IMG/VR virus record: IMGVR_UViG_3300046542_000248
Span: 124,001-188,000 of that record
Strand: one strand, 5' to 3'
DNA: 64,000 nt
Shown here: in pieces, positions 11,383 to 51,337 of the stretch
Layout of the letters: every line of letters begins with the position of its first letter
Position numbering within the stretch: position 1 is the stretch's first letter
The notes under the pieces: model-generated
The model's database searches: none
Seen by the model: the letters and a program-made list of their open reading frames with translations, nothing else
Told to the model about the DNA's origin: nothing
Program-made: the position numbers and the translations under genes

Positions 11383-11399
11383 TTGTATATTATCAGGGC

Positions 11400-11437
11400 A
11401 ACAATCTATTACAGTAAGTACTGAAGTATATATTATT
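11400..11437 (+). promoter_or_regulatory. Tandem late (AACA ATCTAT TA, 11400-11411) and early-type (TATATATTATT, 11427-11437) promoter motifs
   Basis: Both consensus motifs lie upstream of a small ORF. Confidence 0.6.
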
Positions 11438-11455
11438 ATTGTGAGGTGATATTCT

Positions 11456-11581
11456 ATGAATAGCAAGAAACCTCAATCTCCTCAACAACCACCAATTCAA
11501 GGTGGTCTAATGATGGAAGTCGCTGTCGGTGCACAGATCGCTTCCCAGATTATGAACGAATCTCAAGTCAAGAAAGGCTAA
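11456..11581 (+). CDS. 41-aa small protein MNSKKPQSPQQPPIQGGLMMEVAVGAQIASQIMNESQVKKG (not in the ORF track)
   Basis: GAGGTGA RBS, two promoter motifs, and a terminator GCTAAAGC/GCTTTAGC-TTTT at the stop. Confidence 0.7.
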   Translation: MNSKKPQSPQQPPIQGGLMMEVAVGAQIASQIMNESQVKKG

Positions 11582-11741
11582 AGCCATCGCGCTTTAGCTT
11601 TTCTTTATTAAACTATGAAAGGACGTGGGGCTTATAAGAAAATGGTGACAATGATTGTTTCATTATGTTACCCCTGATAAAATTTATGTAATGTGCTCAA
11701 AGCAATATCAAACCCTGATTAAACGTAGGAGGATTTTTATT

Positions 11742-18857: not shown

Positions 18858-20936
18858 ATGCTTCAACCAGATCAAATTGAAGAACTTGACCGTATTGCTA
18901 GTGACATTAAAAATATTGACCATGCTTTAGGGAGTGGATTACTTATTCCACTTGGAAATAAAGTAAACTCTTCACGGGCTGCATTAGTATTTCAACAAAC
19001 AGGTCAGTCTAAAAATCTTGTTGAACCTGAGATTGCAAGAGTATCTACTGGATATGAGAAAGTATTCGGAGATAGATCAACTTCTTTCCATAAGACTGAG
19101 AAAGAATTTGAAGTCGTTAACAAGATTCAAAAGTTTGGTAATGACTTTGTATATGCCTTAGTCCTTAGAGAAAAAGGTACAAATTATTATGATCTTGTAC
19201 TTAGAAACGAAGTAGAATCCTTTGCTGAATCTTCCGGCGTAAAGATCAATAACACGGTTATTGACTCTATGAATATCGGAGATAAGATTAGAGAAGGTGA
19301 GATTCTACACAAATCTAATTCCTATGATGAGAATATGAATTATCGTCTAGGAATTAATGCTAAGACAATTTATATGACTGATCCTGCAATTGTAGAAGAT
19401 GGGTTTAGAACGTCTGTCCCTCTTGCATATCGTCTACGTTCCACTGATGTTATACCGTATAAAGTTCCTAAGAATACAAATGATATCTTCTTGAATCTAT
19501 ATGGGAATAGTGAAGTATACAAAACGTTCCCAGATATTGGTGAGAAGGTAAAGAATAAGGTTCTATGTGGAAAGCGCAGAATTGATTATAATAATGCACA
19601 GTATATGCTTAAGAGTAAGAATCTCCGTAAAGAGATGTTTGGTGATACTCTTACGTATACTGATGGTACTGTAGTTGATATTGATATCTACTCTAATGTA
19701 CCTATTGATGATGTTCCTACCGATCGGGTAAACGAACAGACTCTTAAGTACATGAAAATGATTAGCAAATATTGGCATGAACTAAGAAAAGTTCTTGGTC
19801 GTATTGTCGATAATCCTGAGAATGAATATTCAGACCAAGTTGGTATTACTTATGCTCGGGCTAAAGATGTCTTGAGTATTGGTAAGACTACTAAGTGGGA
19901 TGATGATGGTTCTATCTTTGATAATATGATCATGTATTTTACAGTGGTCAATACTAAGAAAGCTGTTATCGGTACGAAACTTGTAGGACGCCATGGTAAT
20001 AAAGGCGTAATCTCCGAAATTGTTGAAGAGAAGTATATGCCACGAAGTGAAGATGGTGAATATGCTGAAATCATCTTTAGTGCTCTTTCAGTTATTGGTC
20101 GTCTGAATCCTTCACAGCTATATGAGCTTGAGCTTAACTGGATTGTGGATGAGATTCTTAATGGTAATGTCTCGCAGAAGAAGAAGTTCGATACACTGCT
20201 TGACTTCCTATCCATCTGTAACCCAAATCAAGAAAAAGTAGTGCGTGAACTATATGATTCTCTTGATAAAGCTGAAAAAGAAGTATTTATGAGTCAACTT
20301 ACAACTGAGTTCGTTACATTCCAACCGCCTAGTATGTCGATTAGCTTTGACAACTATGCTAAACTGGTTGAGAAGGTTGAACCTAAGAAGAAACGCTTTA
20401 CAGTTATGGATGAAAAAGGACAAGTCTTTAACATCCAAAACAAACTGATTATGTCTGATTCATATATCTACAAACTGAAACATGAACCGATTACAAAGTT
20501 CTCTGTACGTTCTAAAGGTACTATTAATCCACGTACATTCCTTCCGATTAAATCGCATGCATATAGCAGAGGAACAGCTCTGTTTAATAACCAAGCGATT
20601 CGGATTGGTAATATGGAAATGGATATCCTCAATCTGTGTAACGATCCTGCGGCTATTAACTACTTTACACGATTGTATTGTACATCCGTAATTGGTCGTC
20701 GTGAATTTGCACAGCTACTTGATACAAACATCTTCCAAGATGAAATGGAAATCGAGATGAACAACTCAACTTCTCGTGTAGTAGATCTATTCAACTCTAC
20801 TTTCATGGTATGTGGTATGGGACTACGTTTCGAATATCCAGATAAGAAAGTAAATGACATCTTCCTTGAAGAGATTAAGAACATGGAAAGCAAACATGTA
20901 AAAGTTGTCTTTGCCGGATGGGATAAGTTTAAATAA
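18858..20936 (+). CDS. RNA polymerase beta C-terminal half, probable non-virion RNAP subunit
   Basis: NSSRA, EDG, GTKLVGRHGNKGVIS, MP, GRLNPSQLYE, YIYKLKH, RIGNME. Confidence 0.93.
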   Translation: MLQPDQIEELDRIASDIKNIDHALGSGLLIPLGNKVNSSRAALVFQQTGQSKNLVEPEIARVSTGYEKVFGDRSTSFHKTEKEFEVVNKIQKFGNDFVYALVLREKGTNYYDLVLRNEVESFAESSGVKINNTVIDSMNIGDKIREGEILHKSNSYDENMNYRLGINAKTIYMTDPAIVEDGFRTSVPLAYRLRSTDVIPYKVPKNTNDIFLNLYGNSEVYKTFPDIGEKVKNKVLCGKRRIDYNNAQYMLKSKNLRKEMFGDTLTYTDGTVVDIDIYSNVPIDDVPTDRVNEQTLKYMKMISKYWHELRKVLGRIVDNPENEYSDQVGITYARAKDVLSIGKTTKWDDDGSIFDNMIMYFTVVNTKKAVIGTKLVGRHGNKGVISEIVEEKYMPRSEDGEYAEIIFSALSVIGRLNPSQLYELELNWIVDEILNGNVSQKKKFDTLLDFLSICNPNQEKVVRELYDSLDKAEKEVFMSQLTTEFVTFQPPSMSISFDNYAKLVEKVEPKKKRFTVMDEKGQVFNIQNKLIMSDSYIYKLKHEPITKFSVRSKGTINPRTFLPIKSHAYSRGTALFNNQAIRIGNMEMDILNLCNDPAAINYFTRLYCTSVIGRREFAQLLDTNIFQDEMEIEMNNSTSRVVDLFNSTFMVCGMGLRFEYPDKKVNDIFLEEIKNMESKHVKVVFAGWDKFK

Positions 20937-21692: not shown

Positions 21693-21706
21693 AAATATAT
21701 ATTATT
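21693..21706 (+). promoter_or_regulatory. Early-type promoter motif
   Basis: AAATATATATTATT. Confidence 0.75.
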
Positions 21707-21745: not shown

Positions 21746-23950
21746 ATGACGAAGTTTCATAATTTAGCAAAAGGATTAGTTGAGGATTTAAGTAGAGGTA
21801 AGTATCTGTCGGCTGTCGTAGCTTTACAGCATCCCGAGATTATGGTACCCCTTTATGAGATTATCAAGAAGAAACCGAAGGATATTAATGATCGGGAATT
21901 TCAAGGATTAAGAGATGTGATCATTGCAAGTAAAGCTTTATACGAAGCCAATCAGTATATGAGTGGTATTACGTATAAGCTTATGCCCAATGATACTTAT
22001 GATACTTTGATTGAGATTTATAAGGGACTGAAGAATGAAGATGAGCCATTCCAATCCTTTATTCCGAATGGAATGAGAAGTGTTTCTCAAGATTATCCTG
22101 AATTATCAGGTACTCTTGATAAGGCTTATACAATCTATGATCTCAAGGAGAAACCATCTGTAGAAAAATGGATAAGAAAGATCTTTAAAGAGCTTGGAGT
22201 TAAGAAGTTAAAGTTAATGGTGGCTCTAAAGTTCGATGGAACTTCCGTAACTGTTACTTATGAACCAAACCAATTGAAGAAGTTCGATGAGTCTACCTTA
22301 ATTCCTACTAAGGCAATAACTCGTGGAGATTTCGATAATAATCTTGGTGTCGACCTATTCAATATTCTTGTAGGAAGAGATCAATTGGTTATCAATGACG
22401 GTATAAGTGATTGTCTTAACGGTGAAAGAATTGGTGTTCAGTATGAAGCAATGGTTACCGAATATGGTAGAGAGAATCTATCTAAGATTGTTGGTATCAA
22501 CTATTCTACTCGTCGAGCAGCCATTGCAGCAGCCTTAAAACGGATATCTAATCCTAAGACACCACCACTTGAACTTGGTGAGATCAATAAGTGTGTTACA
22601 TTAGTACCTTTAATGATTGATGACAATTCTATTGGTAGATTTAAGAAATCTATGTACTTTGAAACTTTGATGGAAACTATTTCGATGGATTTCTATCGTC
22701 CTGATAGTAAAACCTCATTGGAGTATCGAATTGATTCTATTGATGGAGATATAGACAGTCTTCTCAATAAGTTTCAAGTACTCGTGGATGAATATGTCAA
22801 GAATCGTGCCGATCTAAACTTCAGCATTGATGGTCTAGTATTATCAGTCGCTGATTATAAGCACGTTGATACTCTTGGTCGGTCTAGCAATAAGAACAAG
22901 TGGCAAATTGCTTACAAGTTCGATGCAATGATTCAAAGAACCAAGATCACAGGGATTATTTCATCCATGGGTAAGCAAGGGTTTATCGGACACAATATAA
23001 CCTTTGATCCTATTGAGTTTAATGGGGTAGGATATGTGAAAGCTCCTGTTAATAATGTGACAAGATTCAATACACTTAACCCACATATCGGTGATGAAGT
23101 TCTTGTCTCATATAACGCAGATGTTATGGGTTATATCTACAAGGATGAAACCTGTAAACCTGCACCTGATGGTTTGGCTATTCCAATGCCAACCACATGC
23201 CTTAACTGTGGGTGTGAATTGGCTATTACTAAAGATATGCTTAAGTGTATTAATGATACATGTCCAGGTCATAAGGTAGGAACAATCCTTGAAGCAATTC
23301 GAATCTTTAGTATAGATTACTTTGGGGATGAAACTGCTAATGGTCTAGTGATGGATGCCAATATTTCAGATGTAATATCATTCATTAATATGACAAAGGA
23401 CGATCTTGCAAAAGTTCTTAAAGGACTTAATCTGGAAAAAGCATGGGAAGAATTCAAGAATAAGATTAAAGCACCTATTGAATATTCTAAGGTGATTGAT
23501 CTTCTAAGGATTCCAAATCTCAGAACTAAAACGGCTGAAAAGATTCTTGAAGATATCTCTATCAAAGACCTGAAGCAAATGATGCTGATGAAGGATGAGA
23601 AAGTTCTCTTAAAGGCTCTACAGGCAATTAAAGGTATTGATAAGAAGGCTCATGACTTTGCAATCAATCTGATTGATGCTTATCCTGAATTCTCGAATAT
23701 ATCTAAACTTCTAAATTGTATCGAGCCAGTTAAGCATGAGTATGATAAGAAAGTTCTTATCTCTGGATTCCGAAGCAATGAAAAGTTTGAAGAGATATGT
23801 GAAAGATTAAACTTCGAGATTCTTGAATCAGGTACTAAGGTTGATTTGTTGGTTGTAACGCCTGAGAACTTCAATAAAACAAAGGCAGAGAAAGCAAGGA
23901 AACGTGGTATTCCAATTATGCTTTTGTCTGAATTTATTGAAACGTACTGA
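21746..23950 (+). CDS. ligA: NAD-dependent DNA ligase
   Basis: KFDG adenylation motif, TRGD, IDGLV, WQIAYKF, C4 zinc finger (CLNC...CINDTC), HhH, BRCT-like end. Confidence 0.92.
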   Translation: MTKFHNLAKGLVEDLSRGKYLSAVVALQHPEIMVPLYEIIKKKPKDINDREFQGLRDVIIASKALYEANQYMSGITYKLMPNDTYDTLIEIYKGLKNEDEPFQSFIPNGMRSVSQDYPELSGTLDKAYTIYDLKEKPSVEKWIRKIFKELGVKKLKLMVALKFDGTSVTVTYEPNQLKKFDESTLIPTKAITRGDFDNNLGVDLFNILVGRDQLVINDGISDCLNGERIGVQYEAMVTEYGRENLSKIVGINYSTRRAAIAAALKRISNPKTPPLELGEINKCVTLVPLMIDDNSIGRFKKSMYFETLMETISMDFYRPDSKTSLEYRIDSIDGDIDSLLNKFQVLVDEYVKNRADLNFSIDGLVLSVADYKHVDTLGRSSNKNKWQIAYKFDAMIQRTKITGIISSMGKQGFIGHNITFDPIEFNGVGYVKAPVNNVTRFNTLNPHIGDEVLVSYNADVMGYIYKDETCKPAPDGLAIPMPTTCLNCGCELAITKDMLKCINDTCPGHKVGTILEAIRIFSIDYFGDETANGLVMDANISDVISFINMTKDDLAKVLKGLNLEKAWEEFKNKIKAPIEYSKVIDLLRIPNLRTKTAEKILEDISIKDLKQMMLMKDEKVLLKALQAIKGIDKKAHDFAINLIDAYPEFSNISKLLNCIEPVKHEYDKKVLISGFRSNEKFEEICERLNFEILESGTKVDLLVVTPENFNKTKAEKARKRGIPIMLLSEFIETY

Positions 23951-23981
23951 GCATCTTTAAATTAAAAAAGTAAATATTCTA

Positions 23982-23993
23982 AACATTAAATTG
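23982..23993 (+). promoter_or_regulatory. Late-type promoter AACA-N6-TG
   Basis: AACA TTAAAT TG at the start of an intergenic region with no + strand ORF. Confidence 0.6.
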
Positions 23994-24342
23994 GGAGAAT
24001 TTTAGAGTACACAAGTAATCACCACTCAACCATTTATGTTGATCGTCGTGTCCAAACCGTTCTCTCTTTGAAAACCTAATACTTCAAATCATTTCGCCCA
24101 TATACAGGAATGATCATAGCGACCTTTACTCGGAATTTTCTGCTGGATTCACCTATCAAGTTTGGTTGAATTAAATCGCAGAAGGTGAAGAGATCCTTGC
24201 TGAAGTTATTAGAAAGAGAGAATACATAGGTAGACGTTATATCATTTATCAAAGTGGACGTATTCACTTAGTTACCAATATTCTCATAACCATACAACGA
24301 ACCAGGGGTCAATGCGATCTCTGGTTCGTTCCTTATTTTTTT
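23993..24342 (+). ncRNA. Putative structured non-coding RNA (~300 nt plus terminator), family unknown
   Basis: Nested helices 23995-24000/24280-24285, 24005-24010/24260-24265, 24050-24054/24255-24259, 24060-24069/24213-24222, 24076-24086/24201-24212, 24138-24143/24178-24183; promoter upstream and terminator at 24296-24342. Confidence 0.6.
24296..24342 (+). terminator. Intrinsic terminator
   Basis: AACGAACCAGGG...CTCTGGTTCGTT followed by a T tract. Confidence 0.75.
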
Positions 24343-24367
24343 GTCAAAATGAATCGAATATGAAACC

Positions 24368-24381
24368 AAATATATATTATT
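24368..24381 (+). promoter_or_regulatory. Early-type promoter motif
   Basis: AAATATATATTATT. Confidence 0.75.
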
Positions 24382-24424
24382 ATAGTGTATATAGAACAAT
24401 ACTATCGAGGAGAGTGTATCTAAT

Positions 24425-25042
24425 TTGTCAAAACCATTTGGAGATTTAACACGAGAAGGCGTAAACACACTGTTTAACTGTACGTCAGCAAAACATGGCG
24501 GCAATATTGACATCAATTCAGAAGTTCAAGGATTTATTGATACTGGTGTCTCAAAAGGTATTACACATACCTTAAACCCTTTACTGGGGCAAGGTCCAGA
24601 TAAGCGTTTGGTACTCGGTCCATTCACATATGGGCACGGTGTATTCATGCTTACTGATGAGCAAGGATTCTTTGATAATATCGAAGAATATAAAAAAGAG
24701 CCTAGACTAAATCTAGCTCTGGTTGAGTTGATCGCTGAAAGTATTAGAAGCGATAGCAATGAAATATTTTATGAAGCAGCACATAATTACGCTAAGCTAA
24801 GTGAATATGATGCTGAGACACGCATCTGGACTGAGCAGCCGAATGAAGAAGATCGTGGTGTAGAGTTGGATTCATCCTCTCTATATCTGCTTGCAGCTGT
24901 ACATGTATTGGCAATTGCGCATATGTTACTGCGTTCCGCTAATAAAGAAGAAGCTTCACTAGTTGAAATACCAGGTGAGGGAATCTATACCATTGAGTGG
25001 GTTGACGACCAGTGGGCAATCGGGTTTACTCTCACCCAGTAA
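24425..25042 (+). CDS. Acidic protein, paralog of 25133..25837 (possible HU/IHF-like fold)
   Basis: Shared motifs IDTG, GPFTYG, DRGVE, VEIPGEG.YTIE; GAGGAG RBS; TTG start. Confidence 0.7.
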   Translation: MSKPFGDLTREGVNTLFNCTSAKHGGNIDINSEVQGFIDTGVSKGITHTLNPLLGQGPDKRLVLGPFTYGHGVFMLTDEQGFFDNIEEYKKEPRLNLALVELIAESIRSDSNEIFYEAAHNYAKLSEYDAETRIWTEQPNEEDRGVELDSSSLYLLAAVHVLAIAHMLLRSANKEEASLVEIPGEGIYTIEWVDDQWAIGFTLTQ

Positions 25043-25132
25043 ATATATATAATTATAGTGTATATGACACAATATTAGAAGTATCTAGTGTGTCAAAAAA
25101 TCAAACTACAAATTATTAGGAGGATTTTAACA

Positions 25133-25837
25133 ATGGCTAAAAAACTTATCGAGGTAACAAACGAAGTATCCAGCAAAGCATTTAACTGTGAACGCAACAT
25201 TGACGGTGACAATAAAAAGGCCGAAATTGATATCGCAATTCAAGCAATGATCGACACTGGTATCTCCAATGCAATTCCACGTGCTCTGTTCCTTATCATG
25301 GACGCTGAGCCGAAAGAAGAAGTACAATTGGTTGTAGGGCCGTTCACATACGGTGTAACTGCTCGTAAATCCGGCGAATCCTTATCATTGAATCCAACGT
25401 TCACGTTGACGAACGAAAAGAAATTCTTGGCTGAGCTTGACAATTTCGAAGAGAAGCTGCACAAGAACGTTTCCCTTATCGAAAGCATTGCAACAACTAT
25501 CGACGACGAAGTGTTCCTTGATACTGTTATGCACTGCTGCAAATTGGATGAATACGATGTGGCTGAAAGCGAATGGATTGAAAAGAAAACTGACGCTGAC
25601 CGTGGCGTTGAATTTGATCAAACTTCTTCGCAGCTATTCGTTGCATTACACATCTCCGCAATCATCCATGTCTTGGTTAACTCCAAGTCTCCGGATGAAG
25701 TAGTTAAATATGAAGTACCGGGCGAAGGTACGTATACGATCGAGCGTAAAAAGGACAAATGGGAATTCGGATTCATTCCATCCAAAGAGTTCAAACAAAC
25801 GATCAAAAACGACCGTCTTATCGAAGCCCTCGTCTAA
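25133..25837 (+). CDS. Acidic, probably highly expressed protein with two HU/IHF-like segments
   Basis: AGGAGG RBS; EVPGEGTYTIER...FGFIPSKEFKQTIK resembles HU VQLxGFGTFEV...PAFKPGKxLKxxV; own promoter variant at 25041-25054. Confidence 0.7.
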   Translation: MAKKLIEVTNEVSSKAFNCERNIDGDNKKAEIDIAIQAMIDTGISNAIPRALFLIMDAEPKEEVQLVVGPFTYGVTARKSGESLSLNPTFTLTNEKKFLAELDNFEEKLHKNVSLIESIATTIDDEVFLDTVMHCCKLDEYDVAESEWIEKKTDADRGVEFDQTSSQLFVALHISAIIHVLVNSKSPDEVVKYEVPGEGTYTIERKKDKWEFGFIPSKEFKQTIKNDRLIEALV

Positions 25838-25926
25838 TTATCCTTTATCAAATAGGCCGAACCGGAAACTTATCCGGTTCGGTTCTTACTATTTGTCAAA
25901 ATTTTTTGTAAGGTGGGAGAATATAT

Positions 25927-26132: not shown

Positions 26133-28004
26133 ATGAATTATCTAAGCCAGATGGTCGCTAAAATGTCTGACACCATGGTTGATGGTATTAATGAAGATCT
26201 GTTTGACCGCCGGAAAGGGAAACAAATCTGGGAATTTATCGCTGAAGATTTAAGATCAGTAGAAATGTTACCTGATATATTCCTGAAGAATGTTCAATAT
26301 ATAAAGGACCCGTCTAAACTTGATGTTCGTTTGAACCTGAAGAATATTAAGAATAAGAAGATTCTCAAGAATAAAATTGAGAAGCTTATTCCAGTACAGC
26401 CTGATGTATTCGATGCTATTCGATTTACTGTGGATATTGCCGGTGGTCAGAAAGTAGAGAATACTATTCTGCTTCCGAAATATATAGATAGATACAACTT
26501 CATGATCTCTGGGAATAAAACTTTAGCTATGTTCCAGGTTGTAGATAACGCAACTTACAACCGCAAAGGTGAAGTAATCCTTAAATCCAGAATCCAGAAA
26601 CGTCTTAGCAGAGAAGAGAAGAAAAAGAAATATGAGCTTCTCTGTGTTGAGACAGGCAACCTTTACAAGATCAGTAATTTAAATATCAATCTATTCAAGA
26701 AGACTTTCAATCCGTTATACTACTTTGCGGCTAGAAGATCTATTCTTGGAACGATTGATTTCTTTGGATATACAAAGTTTCTTAATCTAGTTACAGAAGT
26801 TAAGCAGCCTGAATTGTTCTATTACTTCCGTATCAATTCTAACATTCTTTTCGAGTGTGAAAAGACGTTGTTTGATGATGACGGATTCTTTAGAACTTTC
26901 ACAGGATTACTTGCTCAGCTATTCAATACTCGTAACAAGATTGAAGATATTTATGAAGAAGAACTTTGGGTCAAGAAACTTGGCACGCTATTCACATCAG
27001 CGGCTAAGAATCAATTGAACAAAGGTTACGATGTTATGAAGTCATTCCGAAACGTTCTGGACACCACAACTCAGAATGCTTTACGGATTGATTACAAAGA
27101 CAAAGCTGATATCTACTGTGTATTACGGTGGATGATGCGAGAGTTCAATGAGTTGAGAAATATGGATAACAACTCCTTGGCTAATAAACGTATTCGTACT
27201 AATGAATATATTGCTGCATACTTTGCACGGTATTGGAAAGATAAAGTTAACTACGCTTTGAATCTGAAGCCGTATGATAAAGACAAGCTTGCACGGATCT
27301 TCAAGGTTGATGAGCACATTCTTATCAAAGCCTTGTTCCGTGGTAAGAAGCCATCTCCACTATTCCGTTACAATATTGATATCAATGATCTTCAAGCATT
27401 GAACGGATTGAAATTCTCACTCACAGGTATTCAAGGTCTGCCATCCGATAAAGTTAAGGATGAACAACGGGATATCTATCCGAGTCATCTTGGACGGTTC
27501 GAGCTTAATGCTATCTCGTCCAGTTCACCAGGTATCTCCGGTATGCTTACTCCATTCTGTAAGATTTATGATGGAGGATACTTCGGAGATTCTCAAGCAA
27601 TCGAGAAGCCTTATATCAAGAAGCTTCGTAAGAGAATCAAAGAGATTAAAACTAATGAGGGTGTATATAATGTGATTAGAGCGCATTATAAAACTCTTGA
27701 GGAAGATCATGAGAAGAGAAGATTCAATCTCAAGTATCGTGAACTTCGAAATGAACGTGGCTTTATCCAGATCGTAAGACCTAGATATATTCGTAATGAG
27801 CGAGGATATATTCGAGTTGATAAGGTGATTAATCCTGCGAGTTACAAACGTACTCCTAAAGGATATATCAAAGTCAACAGAAACTTTGTTCTATTGCGAC
27901 TTACTGCTAGTGTTAAACCTGAATTTAAACAAGGTTCGTATGTTAGAACTCCTGATGGCTATATTGGAATTACAATTAATCCAAACGGTCTATTTAAGAA
28001 ATAA
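26133..28004 (+). CDS. RNA polymerase beta N-terminal half, probable non-virion RNAP subunit, with C-terminal repeats
   Basis: LPK...FMISGN, LANKRIR, fork/Rif region RDIYPSHLGRF....SSSSPGISGMLTPF. Confidence 0.85.
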   Translation: MNYLSQMVAKMSDTMVDGINEDLFDRRKGKQIWEFIAEDLRSVEMLPDIFLKNVQYIKDPSKLDVRLNLKNIKNKKILKNKIEKLIPVQPDVFDAIRFTVDIAGGQKVENTILLPKYIDRYNFMISGNKTLAMFQVVDNATYNRKGEVILKSRIQKRLSREEKKKKYELLCVETGNLYKISNLNINLFKKTFNPLYYFAARRSILGTIDFFGYTKFLNLVTEVKQPELFYYFRINSNILFECEKTLFDDDGFFRTFTGLLAQLFNTRNKIEDIYEEELWVKKLGTLFTSAAKNQLNKGYDVMKSFRNVLDTTTQNALRIDYKDKADIYCVLRWMMREFNELRNMDNNSLANKRIRTNEYIAAYFARYWKDKVNYALNLKPYDKDKLARIFKVDEHILIKALFRGKKPSPLFRYNIDINDLQALNGLKFSLTGIQGLPSDKVKDEQRDIYPSHLGRFELNAISSSSPGISGMLTPFCKIYDGGYFGDSQAIEKPYIKKLRKRIKEIKTNEGVYNVIRAHYKTLEEDHEKRRFNLKYRELRNERGFIQIVRPRYIRNERGYIRVDKVINPASYKRTPKGYIKVNRNFVLLRLTASVKPEFKQGSYVRTPDGYIGITINPNGLFKK

Positions 28005-39556: not shown

Positions 39557-40330
39557 ATGAGTTATCTAGAATACGATGATGGGCCGCAAAACGATACAAA
39601 TGTGCGGACGATTATAGAGTTCATTGATAATGAATTCTATACAGAGGCAATTAAGGAGCAAATCTTTGAAAGCCTTGATTGTAACACTGTGGATTATATT
39701 GATCAAATCCGAATGAAAATTGAAGAAGTTCAAGAGAAGTATGATGAAGCTGATTATCAGTCCATTATCATATTCGAAGAGCAGCTCTACCGAGATACTA
39801 TCGGTTGGATTGAAGATCGTTATAGCGTTGAAATTGATTATGATGACGACTGCTTGAAATCAGTAGCTTATCAAATGTACAAATTCTTCGTTATCGAACT
39901 TAAAACTATTACTACGTCTTTCCTGCTAAATTATATTATTGAAAATTATGATGAATTACTTCCTGGAATTCCTGAAGATAATCTTAATACTCAAGTAACA
40001 GAAAAACTTGATGGTGAAGAAGATAAGAACAAATACATTGCTGTGAGTAATGTAGATGAACTTATCAAACAGGTAAGTTACTTGGATTTTGACTTTGAAA
40101 CTTTCATCCGATATGCTGCAAGAGCAGGAGACATCGAATCCTTCGAAGAGAGAGATGAAGAAGGTACTCCTGAAATTTCTTGGAAGTTTATCGAAGAAGC
40201 ATCACTCGTACAAACCATTCTTTATCAGATTGTAAATGGTGAGTATGATCGCTCGATCATTCTTGCTATTACAGATAACCTTATCAATGTATTCAATATC
40301 AAAATCAAATTGGACGAGGAGAATGATTAA
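39557..40330 (+). CDS. Hypothetical acidic protein
   Basis: AAGGAG RBS. Confidence 0.7.
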   Translation: MSYLEYDDGPQNDTNVRTIIEFIDNEFYTEAIKEQIFESLDCNTVDYIDQIRMKIEEVQEKYDEADYQSIIIFEEQLYRDTIGWIEDRYSVEIDYDDDCLKSVAYQMYKFFVIELKTITTSFLLNYIIENYDELLPGIPEDNLNTQVTEKLDGEEDKNKYIAVSNVDELIKQVSYLDFDFETFIRYAARAGDIESFEERDEEGTPEISWKFIEEASLVQTILYQIVNGEYDRSIILAITDNLINVFNIKIKLDEEND

Positions 40331-49219: not shown

Positions 49220-51337
49220 ATGGGAAACAAAAAAGAGAAAAAAGCTAGACTTAAATTGAAAAAGAAAATGAAAGAGGTAGCTAAGACCCGCTACGCTATG
49301 GGTAATTGGAAACATAGTTTGAATGAAATTGTGGCACAGCTACAAGAAGAAGGGGAATTCACATCTACTGGGGATAGAAATCGAATCTATCCTACAATTA
49401 ATGAATTCGGTACTATTGATTCATATGATTCATATATTGAAGCACTAATCACTGGCACTAAACGCCTATTGTCTGATGGTAAGGATGAACTAGCCAAACT
49501 GACAATGGCATTCAAGTTTAATTCGGATGACGAATTTGAAGAGATGAACTATGTACGTTTCCTCTTCAATATTATCATGTGGCGTCCGTTTATCGTATCT
49601 AACATTGCTGTGACTAAGAAAGATATCTTCAATGCTGAAGTATTCCACAATAAGAAATATGAGGAGTATTTCAATAACTTTGCAGATAGATTTAGAGATA
49701 GATTTACAATGCAAGAATACTCTGAGATTCTATTCGATATTCAAGTGTATATGAATAAGATCGCAGTTGAACTTGGTCCGTTATTCGGTAACTCCATCTC
49801 TATCTATGACATGGTAAAGATGGCAAAACGTAATAACGAAATCAATGCTTTAATGAATACGGAAGTAGATCTTGAAAACTTCCAAGTCAGTCAAGTAGAG
49901 GAATTCCTCATCAAACAGACTGATCGCTTCTTCCAAATCTTGATGAATGAATCGGATAAGAATAATCCTCTTAAACCATTCATTCGTGCAGGTGTAGGTG
50001 TAAACAAACGTCAAGTTCAAGAGATCTTCTTGCACTTGGGCTTTAAACCGGATTTATCAGGTTCCACTATGCCATTAACTAGTAACAGTAACTTTACTAC
50101 TTATGGCTTGAAAGATCCAAGAGCATTGTATGTGGATGCTCAAGGTGCTCGTAAAGCCGCTATCATGCAGCTCGCAGTTAGTGAGTCAGGCTATTACGGT
50201 CGCCATCAAAGTTTCGTAACTTCGAATGTCGTACTACATGAAGATCCATCGTATTCTTGCAATACGAAGAATCTGTTGAATATCAAGATCGAATCTGCAT
50301 TGGATCTTGAACTATTTGATGGACGGTTCTACAAAACTGGTGAGAAGCGTTACAAGATTCTTACACAGAAAGACACAAATCTAATTGGTGAAACTCTGGA
50401 GTTCAGAACACCACAAACTTGTGCGAATAAAGATAGTCATATCTGTAAAGTCTGCTACGGTACAATGTATAACGTAAACTACGGAATGCATGCAGGACTG
50501 TTTGCAGCAATTGATTCAAATGAAAATAAAACTCAGCGACAGCTATCTGCACGACATGCATTAGCTACAATGAGTGCCACCATTAACTTGATCGACGAGA
50601 AGATGTTCCTAATCAATCAAAATGGCTGGCTGTTTAGTCTTAATAATGATATTGATAGAAGTAAGTATTCTATCGTATTCAATGCTTCGGATGTATTCAT
50701 GGATAACCCTGAAAACTACGAGCAATATGATAATTACTACGTTAATAAACTGACGTTCAAGAATAACAAAACCGAAGAACATTTCGAAGTGTATGAGGAG
50801 CAAAATACTCATATGTATTTGAGTAAGCAACTGTACAGCACTCTTAGAGATAAGAGATTCTTCGGGTTAGATAACGATGAATCTATCTCAATCCAATTAA
50901 AGAACTTCAGCATTGATGAGCCATTCACATTCTTACGGATCTCAAATGCTGAACTTGCTAAACCGCTAAAAGAGTTGGCTGGATTCATTCAAAAAGGTAA
51001 GAAACAACTTGAAGATGTTTTCGATTACCATGAATTCACTGATAAACTGAATAAACTTTATAGATATGGGGGTATGGCAATCCCATCCGTCCATATTGAA
51101 ATGCTTCTGAGAAATCTTATTAGAAGAACTGATGATGAGTTAAAGATTCCTGATTGGGAAGTAGAACAAACTCCTGATATGTATAAGATGGTTTCACTCA
51201 ATGATTCCATCATCCTATCAAACTCTGTAACTCTTGGATTGATGTTCGAGAAAGTTCGTCGTCAACTTAAAATGCCAAGAACTTATAGAAAACGTGGAAG
51301 TTCGATCTATAGCGTACTGTTCATTAACGAGCAATAA
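49220..51337 (+). CDS. RNA polymerase beta' C-terminal half, probable non-virion RNAP subunit
   Basis: Bridge helix GARKAA.....SESGYYGR, Zn site RTPQTC...ICKVCYG, trigger loop TQRQLSARH, HIEMLLRN. Confidence 0.9.
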   Translation: MGNKKEKKARLKLKKKMKEVAKTRYAMGNWKHSLNEIVAQLQEEGEFTSTGDRNRIYPTINEFGTIDSYDSYIEALITGTKRLLSDGKDELAKLTMAFKFNSDDEFEEMNYVRFLFNIIMWRPFIVSNIAVTKKDIFNAEVFHNKKYEEYFNNFADRFRDRFTMQEYSEILFDIQVYMNKIAVELGPLFGNSISIYDMVKMAKRNNEINALMNTEVDLENFQVSQVEEFLIKQTDRFFQILMNESDKNNPLKPFIRAGVGVNKRQVQEIFLHLGFKPDLSGSTMPLTSNSNFTTYGLKDPRALYVDAQGARKAAIMQLAVSESGYYGRHQSFVTSNVVLHEDPSYSCNTKNLLNIKIESALDLELFDGRFYKTGEKRYKILTQKDTNLIGETLEFRTPQTCANKDSHICKVCYGTMYNVNYGMHAGLFAAIDSNENKTQRQLSARHALATMSATINLIDEKMFLINQNGWLFSLNNDIDRSKYSIVFNASDVFMDNPENYEQYDNYYVNKLTFKNNKTEEHFEVYEEQNTHMYLSKQLYSTLRDKRFFGLDNDESISIQLKNFSIDEPFTFLRISNAELAKPLKELAGFIQKGKKQLEDVFDYHEFTDKLNKLYRYGGMAIPSVHIEMLLRNLIRRTDDELKIPDWEVEQTPDMYKMVSLNDSIILSNSVTLGLMFEKVRRQLKMPRTYRKRGSSIYSVLFINEQ

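What the first reader, a model, noticed from the sequence alone, without database searches (positions are those of the whole stretch)
23982..24342. Unannotated ~300-nt rod/branched non-coding RNA with its own late promoter and terminator
Seen in sequence: this ~470-bp gap is the largest without a credible gene in an otherwise packed window. It starts at an AACA-N6-TG late promoter (predicted +1 G23993) and ends at an intrinsic terminator. Between them the sequence folds back in strictly nested order: GAGAAT 23995/ATTCTC 24280; GAGTAC 24005/GTATTC 24260; GTCCA 24050/TGGAC 24255; TTCTCTCTTT 24060/AAAGAGAGAA 24213; CTAATACTTCA 24076/TGAAGTTATTAG 24201 (one bulge). Side hairpins are TCAAC/GTTGA, ATCATT/AATGAT and TTCTGC-ATTCACC/GGTTGAAT-GCAGAA. 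I see no tRNA, tmRNA, SRP or intron hallmarks. Inference: a phage-encoded structured RNA made late in infection. It could be a 6S-like RNAP decoy (long duplex with bubbles, useful for a phage switching between host, virion and non-virion RNAPs), a virion or packaging RNA, or an anti-defence sponge.
Basis: partly seen in the sequence, partly recalled or inferred. Interest (0 to 1): 0.85.

Follow-up and report, generated by a model that had tools for sequence, protein, structure and literature searches.

The report
New rod-shaped late phage RNA
The gap after the DNA ligase gene of this uncultivated AR9-like jumbo phage holds a real, conserved gene for a folded RNA of about 350 bases that makes no protein, has its own late promoter and terminator, matches no known RNA family, and has an unknown function.

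Summary
Window 23951-24424 is the largest gene-free gap (474 bp). It starts with an exact AR9-type late promoter (AACA-N6-TG, +1 = G23993). It ends at a 15-bp intrinsic terminator (24296-24342), followed by an AR9-type early promoter for the next gene.

The same element lies after the ligase gene in six other distinct phage sequences from metagenomes. They share one fold: a long imperfect rod closed by 5'/3' pairing, one side hairpin, an apical arm and an invariant GAAAAM bulge. In the core, 93% of pair cells are paired, against 38-50% when partners are slid. 26 of 65 pairs show compensatory changes with 5 sequences, and 48 of 65 with 7.

G-U pairs outnumber A-C 59 to 5, so the plus-strand RNA is the selected molecule. 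There is no conserved ORF, no codon periodicity, and no Pfam, PHROG, Rfam, tRNA or tmRNA match.

The gene sits between the two halves of the non-virion RNA polymerase beta gene. Function is not shown. It is most likely a stable, trans-acting, protein-binding RNA. A 6S-type open-promoter mimic is not supported: there is no large bubble and no UGUU motif. I rate it a new RNA family of moderately high interest.

The parts
23982..23993 (+). Late (non-virion RNAP type) promoter AACA-N6-TG; predicted +1 = G23993
   Evidence: It matches the AR9 late consensus AACA-(6N)-T[A/G]+1 (PMC5312081). The motif is kept at the same place in L002, L005, L006, L263 and L267, with C at -1 in L003. The motif is depleted in the window (53 hits against 103 +/- 10 expected). 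Intergenic hits lie 2-37 nt before gene starts.
23993..24342 (+). Predicted primary transcript of the non-coding RNA (about 350 nt with the terminator hairpin; rod domain 23993-24285)
23995..24026 (+). 5' strand of the closing rod; pairs with 24253-24285
   Evidence: Window MFE fold. Every homolog forms an equivalent 5'/3' closing helix on its own. One U-A to C-G compensatory change between L003 and L005 (columns 14/294).
24253..24285 (+). 3' strand of the closing rod
24043..24069 (+). Core helices 1-2, 5' strand (TCGTC; CC...TTCTCTCTTT); pairs with 24213-24237
   Evidence: Covariation: helix 1 has 5/5 and helix 2 has 15/17 pairs with double changes in the 7-sequence alignment. Coordinates.
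24070..24075 (+). Six-nucleotide bulge GAAAAC (family consensus U-GAAAA-M-C); the only unpaired block invariant in all 7 sequences
   Evidence: Alignments A4 and A5.
24076..24085 (+). Helix 3, 5' strand; pairs with 24202-24212
   Evidence: 8/10 pairs with double changes.
24088..24114 (+). Side hairpin at the three-way junction: stem 24088-24095/24107-24114, variable loop ending in A-Y-A-G
   Evidence: 7/8 pairs with double changes.
24118..24201 (+). Apical arm: helices 24118-22/24197-201, 24128-31/24190-93, 24136-43/24178-85 and 24146-53/24164-71. It has an internal loop GGAA (24132-35) / TGAA (24186-89) and a variable apical loop 24154-63.
24202..24237 (+). 3' strands of core helices 3, 2 and 1 (purine-rich; includes the conserved GGTAG at 24229-33)
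24296..24342 (+). Intrinsic terminator: 15-bp stem, 5-nt loop, T-run
   Evidence: A hairpin of different sequence followed by a T-run sits at the same place in all close homologs.
24368..24387 (+). Boundary marker, not part of the RNA: AR9-type early promoter AAATATATATTAT-N6-G for gene 24425-25042
   Evidence: Consensus from PMC5312081. The motif is enriched in the window (27 hits against 7.8 expected).

Best explanation
This is an independent gene for a structured non-coding RNA. It belongs to a family not described before, in a clade of uncultivated jumbo phages. These phages use the AR9/PBS1 transcription scheme: a virion RNAP for early promoters and a non-virion RNAP for late promoters.

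Inferred from promoter identity: late in infection the non-virion RNAP starts at G23993 and stops at the terminator around 24342.

Shown by comparison: the roughly 300-nt body folds into a long, imperfect, double-stranded rod closed by pairing of its 5' and 3' ends. It has a three-way junction carrying one side hairpin, an apical arm with small purine-rich internal loops, and an invariant six-nucleotide GAAAAM bulge.

Inferred mechanism (my probability about 0.4): the RNA acts in trans as a stable folded molecule that binds and titrates or scaffolds a protein. The bulge and flanking helices would be the recognition site. It would not act by base pairing, as a message, or as a cis leader. The partner is unknown. 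Candidates are one of the phage's two RNA polymerases, because the gene lies between the two halves of the non-virion RNAP beta gene, or a host protein that recognises double-stranded RNA.
For: Promoter and terminator: exact AR9 late consensus and a terminator, both conserved in position across homologs while the terminator sequence varies. In L003 a separate terminator follows the ligase gene upstream of the RNA promoter, so the RNA is its own transcription unit.

Conservation: a syntenic element lies after the ligase gene in L002, L003, L005 and L006. Covariance model R1 detects it in L263 (E 1e-9) and L267 (E 0.003).

Structure: with MAFFT alone and 5 sequences, 93% of cells are paired against 38-50% when slid. 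26 pairs have double changes against 3-13 when slid, and 0 of 500 shuffles reach this. With 7 sequences, 48 of 65 pairs have double changes. All homologs fold alone into the same rod.

The molecule is RNA of the plus strand: G-U/U-G 59 against A-C/C-A 5 in paired columns. The minus strand folds worse.

Not coding: no conserved ORF, no 3-periodicity (0.63/0.73/0.68 against 0.88/0.53/0.30 in the ligase control), many 1-2-nt indels, and ORF pieces have no Pfam or PHROG match.

Trans-acting protein binder rather than base pairer: hairpin loops vary, and the only invariant unpaired block is 6 nt. No recurrent complementary target was found in the flanks.

Not a leader: the downstream gene has its own early promoter, and an AACA-N6-TC element lies between that promoter and the start codon in four close homologs.

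Context: the flanking genes 18858-20936 and 26133-28004 match the AR9 non-virion RNAP chains 7S00_C (E 1e-94) and 7S00_c (E 1.5e-50).
Against: There is no expression, 5'/3'-end or binding evidence of any kind. All sequences are metagenomic and no host is cultured.

The window copy's own folding energy is only about 2 sd better than shuffles without the terminator.

There are only 7 distinct alignable sequences. The 7-sequence alignment was fitted to the model, which inflates pair counts.

The ligase gene has an early promoter and, in the window, no terminator before 24296. Early on, the same sequence is therefore probably also the 3' UTR of the ligase mRNA, and a cis role there is not excluded.

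The protein-binding mechanism is argued by elimination and analogy, not tested.
Confidence: 0.7

Rival explanations
1. A 6S/Ms1-like regulator of a phage multisubunit RNA polymerase. The rod binds the virion or non-virion RNAP late in infection and sequesters or re-programmes it, for example by keeping newly made virion RNAP silent before packaging.
For: Rod shape with 5'/3' closure. The RNA is made from a late promoter. The gene lies between the two halves of the non-virion RNAP beta gene. From my own knowledge, RNAP-binding rods of 180-300 nt are known (6S RNA, mycobacterial Ms1).
Against: There is no large central bubble; the biggest internal loops are about 7x7 nt. No Rfam 6S or Ms1 hit appears even at E<=10. 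No conserved UGUU or [C/U]A-N6-UGUU motif mimics the template-strand promoter that the AR9 non-virion RNAP reads (PMC9209446). The gene neighbourhood is also a general replication and transcription module.
Confidence: 0.12
2. An anti-defence or host-takeover decoy. An abundant dsRNA-like rod, working like adenovirus VA RNA, soaks up a host dsRNA-binding nuclease or an RNA-sensing immune protein.
For: Across the wider clade the rod shape is kept after the ligase gene even where the sequence can no longer be aligned (z from -1.5 to -6; models negative). This is what one expects if shape matters more than sequence. Helices are interrupted every 12 bp or less.
Against: There is no defence or anti-defence gene context, and the host is unknown. 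The invariant GAAAAM bulge and conserved internal loops point to a specific partner rather than a generic dsRNA binder. Homology of the distant rods is unproven.
Confidence: 0.15
3. A cis-acting element: a stabilising 3' UTR of the early ligase mRNA, or a leader/attenuator controlling late read-through into the downstream genes.
For: In the window, no terminator separates the ligase gene (early promoter at 21695) from the element, so early transcripts should end at the same terminator. The element is always next to the ligase gene.
Against: The element keeps its own conserved late promoter. L003 has a terminator between the ligase gene and the element. L271 has an inserted ORF between them. 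The downstream genes carry their own promoters. I saw no segment that could pair alternatively with the terminator, and no riboswitch or T-box hit.
Confidence: 0.07
4. A precursor cut by RNase III or another nuclease into small regulatory RNAs, or a base-pairing regulator.
For: Long duplex character.
Against: There is no conserved single-stranded seed of 7 nt or more. No recurrent complementary sites occur in the flanks. Perfect helices are short.
Confidence: 0.06
5. A packaging or virion RNA like phi29 pRNA.
For: Three-way junction with two loops; late timing.
Against: No Rfam pRNA hit. By inspection of A5 I saw no covarying complementarity between the two loops. The RNA is much longer than pRNA, and no RNA-dependent packaging is known in jumbo myoviruses (my own knowledge).
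Confidence: 0.04
6. Not an RNA gene: a small or decayed protein gene on either strand, or a DNA-level palindrome (origin, cruciform).
For: The window has stop-interrupted reading frames: minus strand 24076-24267 plus 24268-24516, and plus frame 24043-24342 with one stop.
Against: The frames are not conserved in homologs. There is no periodicity and there are frame-breaking indels. The pieces have no family hits. The G-U against A-C asymmetry of 59 to 5 excludes a strand-symmetric DNA structure and a minus-strand product.
Confidence: 0.03

Closest known systems
6S RNA (Rfam RF00013) and mycobacterial Ms1 RNA
   Same: A stable, highly base-paired rod closed by 5'/3' pairing. It is a trans-acting non-coding RNA, and it sits in a genomic and temporal context linked to RNA polymerase.
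   Different: No sequence or covariance-model similarity. No large open-promoter-like bubble. It is longer than 6S and has a three-way junction. The polymerases in question are non-canonical phage enzymes. No template-strand promoter mimic is present.
Adenovirus VA RNA I / other viral dsRNA-like decoy RNAs
   Same: A virus-encoded, abundant-type, imperfect duplex with an apical stem, central junction and terminal stem. The shape appears more conserved than the sequence across the wider clade.
   Different: A bacterial virus, about twice the size, transcribed by a phage RNAP. No target dsRNA sensor is known. This is analogy only.
phi29 pRNA (Rfam RF00044)
   Same: A phage-encoded RNA with a 5'/3' helix and a three-way junction.
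   Different: No model hit. No inter-loop complementarity seen on inspection. Late rather than early promoter. Unrelated phage type.
Large phage-associated RNAs of unknown function (GOLLD, ROOL; PMC12286853, abstract)
   Same: Conserved structured non-coding RNAs found by comparative analysis, with function unknown.
   Different: Those are 500-800 nt, multi-domain and form RNA-only cages. This is a simple rod of about 300 nt with no Rfam match.
AR9 late transcription units (PMC5312081)
   Same: Identical late and early promoter consensus and the same gene order: non-virion RNAP beta C-half, ligase, beta N-half.
   Different: AR9 and BpSp have protein genes directly after the ligase gene and no gap or rod there. 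I did not scan the whole AR9 genome for an equivalent.

Membership tests
Any Rfam 15 family | Covariance-model score at or above the gathering threshold | tested here: not met
   0 hits in the window and in 12 homologous loci. In E-value mode only noise appears: best 17-20 bits against thresholds of 40-90.
tRNA / tmRNA | ARAGORN detection | tested here: not met
   0 genes in the window.
6S RNA | Long closing and terminal helices flanking a large central bubble that mimics an open promoter | tested here: not met
   The rod is present, but the largest internal loops are about 7x7 nt or smaller in all five folds.
6S RNA | Binds RNAP holoenzyme and templates product RNAs | not testable with these tools
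   Needs biochemistry.
Decoy of the AR9-type non-virion RNAP promoter | Unpaired 5'-[C/U]A-N6-UGUU-3', the RNA copy of the template-strand motif 3'-UUGU-N6-AU-5' (PMC9209446) | tested here: not met
   No conserved UGUU. The full motif is absent from all 7 alignable members.
phi29-type pRNA | Rfam model match; two loops with intermolecular complementarity | tested here: not met
   No hit. Inspection of the loops in A5 shows no covarying complementarity.
Riboswitch / T-box / attenuator leader | Known aptamer model; terminator competing with an antiterminator; control of the downstream gene | tested here: not met
   No Rfam hit. The downstream gene has its own promoters. By inspection, I found no segment that could pair alternatively with the terminator.
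Protein-coding gene (either strand) | Conserved ORF, 3-periodic substitution, in-frame indels, family match | tested here: not met
Independent late transcription unit of an AR9-like phage | AACA-N6-T[A/G] with the start at the last base; intrinsic terminator | tested here: met
   Conserved in homologs. The transcript itself has not been observed.
Structured RNA (general) | Compensatory base changes that preserve the helices across homologs, above the controls | tested here: met

The most novel reading that the evidence does not exclude
The RNA is the first riboregulator of a non-canonical, sigma-less phage multisubunit RNA polymerase. It would be a rod RNA, made by the non-virion RNAP, that binds the virion or non-virion enzyme through the GAAAAM bulge and junction. 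It would enforce the early-to-late switch, or silence virion RNAP until it is packaged. This would be a functional analogue of 6S RNA that evolved independently in uracil-DNA jumbo phages.
Probability: 0.12. Interest if true: 0.85.

Novelty: new variant of a known kind. Interest (0 to 1): 0.62.

Why it matters
Jumbo phages of the AR9/PBS1 type run their whole programme with two unusual multisubunit RNA polymerases. The papers I searched describe no conserved structured RNA in this group.

A conserved, late-made, rod-shaped RNA encoded inside the polymerase gene cluster is a concrete new player to test in three areas: the early/late switch, virion RNAP handling, and host takeover or immune evasion.

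It also adds a well-supported family to the short list of phage non-coding RNAs (65 core pairs, most with compensatory changes). It shows that the AR9 promoter grammar extends to a distant uncultivated clade. There the grammar can be used to annotate transcription units, and it may predict uracil-containing DNA.

Tried and rejected
- **Phage DNA searches:** near and distant BLAST of the region against 50,697 phage records gave nothing apart from short chance matches, including some to the early-promoter region.
- **First pattern scan:** the first DNA pattern scan of viral contigs was too loose and returned noise. A stricter two-gap pattern recovered only the 7 contigs already known.
- **Ligase-based scans of IMG/VR:** these added no new RNA-positive loci.
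- **Distant syntenic gaps:** models R1 and R2, with filters off, did not detect the gaps of L264, L265, L266, L268, L270 and L271. Homology of those rods is therefore unproven.
- **Structure-aware aligners:** MAFFT X-INS-i and Q-INS-i are not installed, so the outer arms could not be aligned across all five sequences.
- **Base-pairing targets:** a search for targets of the two loops in the flanks gave only chance-level matches of 7-10 nt.
- **UGUU promoter mimic:** negative.
- **Downstream ~240-aa protein:** I tested it as a possible partner. The model is confident (pLDDT 91) but has no informative PDB or BFVD match.
- **AR9:** there is no gap after its ligase gene. The one 315-bp 'gap' in the first 50 kb of AR9 is an unannotated ORF. 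I did not scan the rest of the genome.
- **Literature:** searches found no description of such an RNA.

Full report
**What is in the sequence**

The window is part of IMG/VR contig IMGVR_UViG_3300046542_000248, which is 246.9 kb. It has 36% G+C.

The region 23951-24424 follows a 734-aa NAD-dependent DNA ligase gene at 21746-23950. It precedes a 205-aa gene at 24425-25042.

It is the largest gene-free gap in the window at 474 bp. The next largest are 295 and 272 bp. An apparent 804-bp gap is filled by the ORF at 39557-40330.

So is the terminator: a 15-bp stem at 24296-24330 followed by a T-run to 24342.

**The phage and its promoter grammar**

The ligase's best matches among sequenced phages are AR9, PBS1 and BpSp, at only about 25% identity. 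The flanking genes 18858-20936 and 26133-28004 match the two beta-subunit halves of the AR9 non-virion RNA polymerase: PDB 7S00 chain C at E 1e-94 and chain c at E 1.5e-50.

For AR9, the promoters were defined experimentally. Early promoters are AAATATATATTAT-(6N)-G+1. Late promoters are AACA-(6N)-T[A/G], where the last base is the start site (PMC5312081).

Both motifs behave as functional signals in this window:
- The early motif is enriched (27 matches against 7.8 expected) and sits in front of genes, including 24370-24380 before the gene at 24425.
- The late motif is depleted overall (53 against 103 +/- 10 expected).
- 14 of the 53 late-motif copies are intergenic, although only about 8.5% of the window is intergenic. 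Ten of these lie 2-37 nt upstream of a gene start on the same strand.

The copy at 23982 is one of three intergenic copies with no gene behind it.

**Not a protein gene**

Both strands carry stop-interrupted frames in the window. These frames are not conserved in the homologs, where stops and frameshifts fall elsewhere.

The four ORF pieces, searched separately, have no Pfam or PHROG family.

Substitutions show no codon periodicity. The variable fraction by position is 0.63/0.73/0.68, against 0.88/0.53/0.30 for the last 298 nt of the ligase gene aligned in the same way. Indels are mostly 1-2 nt.

**Conservation and structure**

Six IMG/VR contigs, giving four distinct sequences (L002, L003=L004, L005=L007, L006), encode ligases 59-64% identical to the window's. 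All keep a gap after the ligase gene.

The gap DNA aligns along its whole length. It contains:
- the AACA-N6-T promoter;
- about 300 nt with invariant blocks;
- a hairpin of different sequence plus a T-run;
- the early promoter of the next gene.

RNAalifold on the plain MAFFT alignment predicts 66 pairs, 26 of them with compensatory double changes.

Counting pairs on the MAFFT-only core alignment (A4) gives:
- 93% of cells paired, against 38-50% when partners are slid by 1-3 columns;
- 26 pairs with double changes, against 3-13 when slid;
- 0 of 500 shuffles reaching any observed measure.

A covariance model of the core (R1) finds two further members behind ligases of 53% identity. These are L263 (E 1e-9) and L267 (E 0.003). 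With these seven sequences, 48 of 65 pairs show double changes and 91% of cells are paired. This alignment was fitted to the model, so it leans towards the structure.

Each homolog folded alone gives the same architecture. The z-scores against dinucleotide shuffles are -5.8 (L002), -7.4 (L005), -7.6 (L003), -2.65 (L006) and -1.96 (window).

The tool's own figures for the window are -3.99 with the terminator, -2.31 without it, and -1.83 for the minus strand. Folding energy alone would therefore not have been convincing for this copy. The comparative evidence is what makes the case.

**Which molecule is selected**

In paired columns, G-U/U-G cells number 59 and A-C/C-A cells number 5. This asymmetry means the plus-strand RNA is under selection. 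It rules out a minus-strand transcript or a DNA cruciform.

**Anatomy in window coordinates**

- Closing rod: 23995-24026 pairs with 24253-24285.
- Helix 1: 24043-47 pairs with 24233-37.
- Helix 2: 24052-69 pairs with 24213-30.
- Bulge: the invariant six-base GAAAAC at 24070-75.
- Helix 3: 24076-85 pairs with 24202-12.
- Three-way junction with a side hairpin: 24088-95 pairs with 24107-14.
- Apical arm: four short helices, 24118-24201, with an internal loop GGAA/TGAA and a variable end loop.

The 5' strand of the rod is pyrimidine-rich and the 3' strand is purine-rich: C-G 127 against G-C 43, and U-A 122 against A-U 59.

The rest are.

**Distribution**

Every relative whose ligase is at least 42% identical, and whose contig extends far enough, keeps a gene-free stretch of about 400-590 bp after the ligase gene. 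In one case (L271) it follows an inserted ORF. The stretch usually has an AACA-N6-T[A/G] motif, a terminator and a downstream early promoter.

These stretches also fold into 260-345-nt rods closed by their ends, usually with a 5'-side hairpin. Their z-scores run from -1.5 to -6.0. Neither model R1 nor R2 detects them, so I count them as probable relatives, not proven ones.

AR9, BpSp and a clade with ligases about 30% identical have protein genes immediately after the ligase gene and no such gap.

**Comparison with known RNAs**

There is no Rfam family at gathering thresholds in the window or in 12 homologous loci. Permissive scans give only noise. There is no tRNA or tmRNA.

The 6S idea fails on the features that can be tested:
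- there is no large central bubble;
- there is no model hit;
- there is no conserved RNA copy of the template-strand promoter (3'-UUGU-N6-AU-5', PMC9209446) that the AR9 non-virion RNAP reads.

A pRNA-like ring is not supported, because inspection of the two loops shows no covarying complementarity.

A leader or attenuator role is unlikely. The next gene has its own early promoter and an AACA-N6-TC element. L003 has a terminator between the ligase gene and the RNA promoter, plus about 570 bp of extra DNA after the RNA.

**What it most likely does**

Shown: it is a conserved, plus-strand, non-coding, rod-shaped RNA element bracketed by a late-type promoter and a terminator.

Inferred: it is made late by the non-virion RNAP as a discrete stable RNA. 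The paired ends and the terminator hairpin would protect both termini.

Inferred by elimination: it works in trans as a folded RNA that binds a protein. The reasons are:
- the helices are maintained by compensation;
- the hairpin loops drift;
- the only invariant single-stranded element is a six-base bulge, too short for a seed but typical of a protein or tertiary contact site;
- no base-pairing target recurs.

The partner is unknown. The position inside the non-virion RNAP gene cluster gives mild support to a polymerase-related role. Conservation of shape beyond alignable sequence gives mild support to a dsRNA-like decoy.

I put about 0.9 on 'real structured RNA gene'. I put about 0.4 on 'trans-acting protein binder', and no more than 0.15 on any single named partner.

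**Limits**

There are no expression data and no cultured host. There are only seven alignable sequences. The outer arms could not be aligned across all members for lack of a structure-aware aligner.

Noticed in passing
window 24425-25042 and 25088-25837 (also L002-L270 after the RNA): There are two paralogous genes of unknown function (205 and 234-249 aa). One or two copies follow the RNA in relatives where the downstream region is available (18 sequences aligned). They have no Pfam or PHROG family. A confident AlphaFold model (pLDDT 91, pTM 0.89) shows a two-fold helix-plus-sheet repeat. It has no PDB match below E 0.1 and matches only two uncharacterised myovirus proteins in BFVD.
   Followed up: partly
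window 18858-20936 and 26133-28004: These are homologs of the C-terminal and N-terminal halves of the AR9 non-virion RNAP beta subunit (PDB 7S00 chains C and c). They bracket the ligase, the RNA and the paralog block. AR9 has the same gene order (g089, g095, g105) with different genes in between.
   Followed up: yes
whole window: The AR9 late-promoter motif AACA-N6-TR is about two-fold depleted (53 against 103 expected), yet concentrated just upstream of gene starts. The AR9 early motif is 3.5-fold enriched. A phage whose ligase is only 25% identical to AR9's therefore appears to use the same promoter grammar. Because AR9's late promoters need deoxyuridine, this phage may have uracil-containing DNA.
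   Followed up: partly
window 24396-24407 (and homologs, A1 columns about 640-655): A conserved AACA-N6-TC element lies between the early promoter and the start codon of the gene after the RNA. It may be a second, late-type promoter with a non-consensus start, as in AR9's 'continuously expressed' genes.
   Followed up: no
L003/L004 8248-8430 and 8800-9367: This relative has an extra terminator directly after the ligase gene. It also has about 570 bp of additional DNA with small ORFs between the RNA and the next conserved gene.
   Followed up: no
L264, L265, L266, L268, L270, L271 (gap after the ligase gene): More distant relatives keep a gene-free stretch that folds into a rod of similar size and topology, but it cannot be aligned or detected with the models. 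L265/L271 and L264/L266/L268 form two alignable subgroups of their own.
   Followed up: partly
window 11383-11654: A 272-bp stretch has no ORF of 70 aa or more. It carries a late-type motif (AACA at 11400, predicted start 11411) immediately followed by a one-mismatch early-promoter motif at 11426.
   Followed up: no
window 25855-25884: A strong hairpin that reads as a terminator on both strands lies in the 295-bp gap after the second paralog.
   Followed up: no
window 24043-24237: The rod has strong strand asymmetry: the 5' strand is pyrimidine-rich and the 3' strand is purine-rich (C-G 127 against G-C 43; U-A 122 against A-U 59 in paired cells). I have no explanation for this.
   Followed up: no
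L272 (AR9) 49595-49908: This apparent 315-bp annotation gap in AR9 (missing g059) contains an ORF with a ribosome-binding site, not an RNA like the one studied here.
   Followed up: partly
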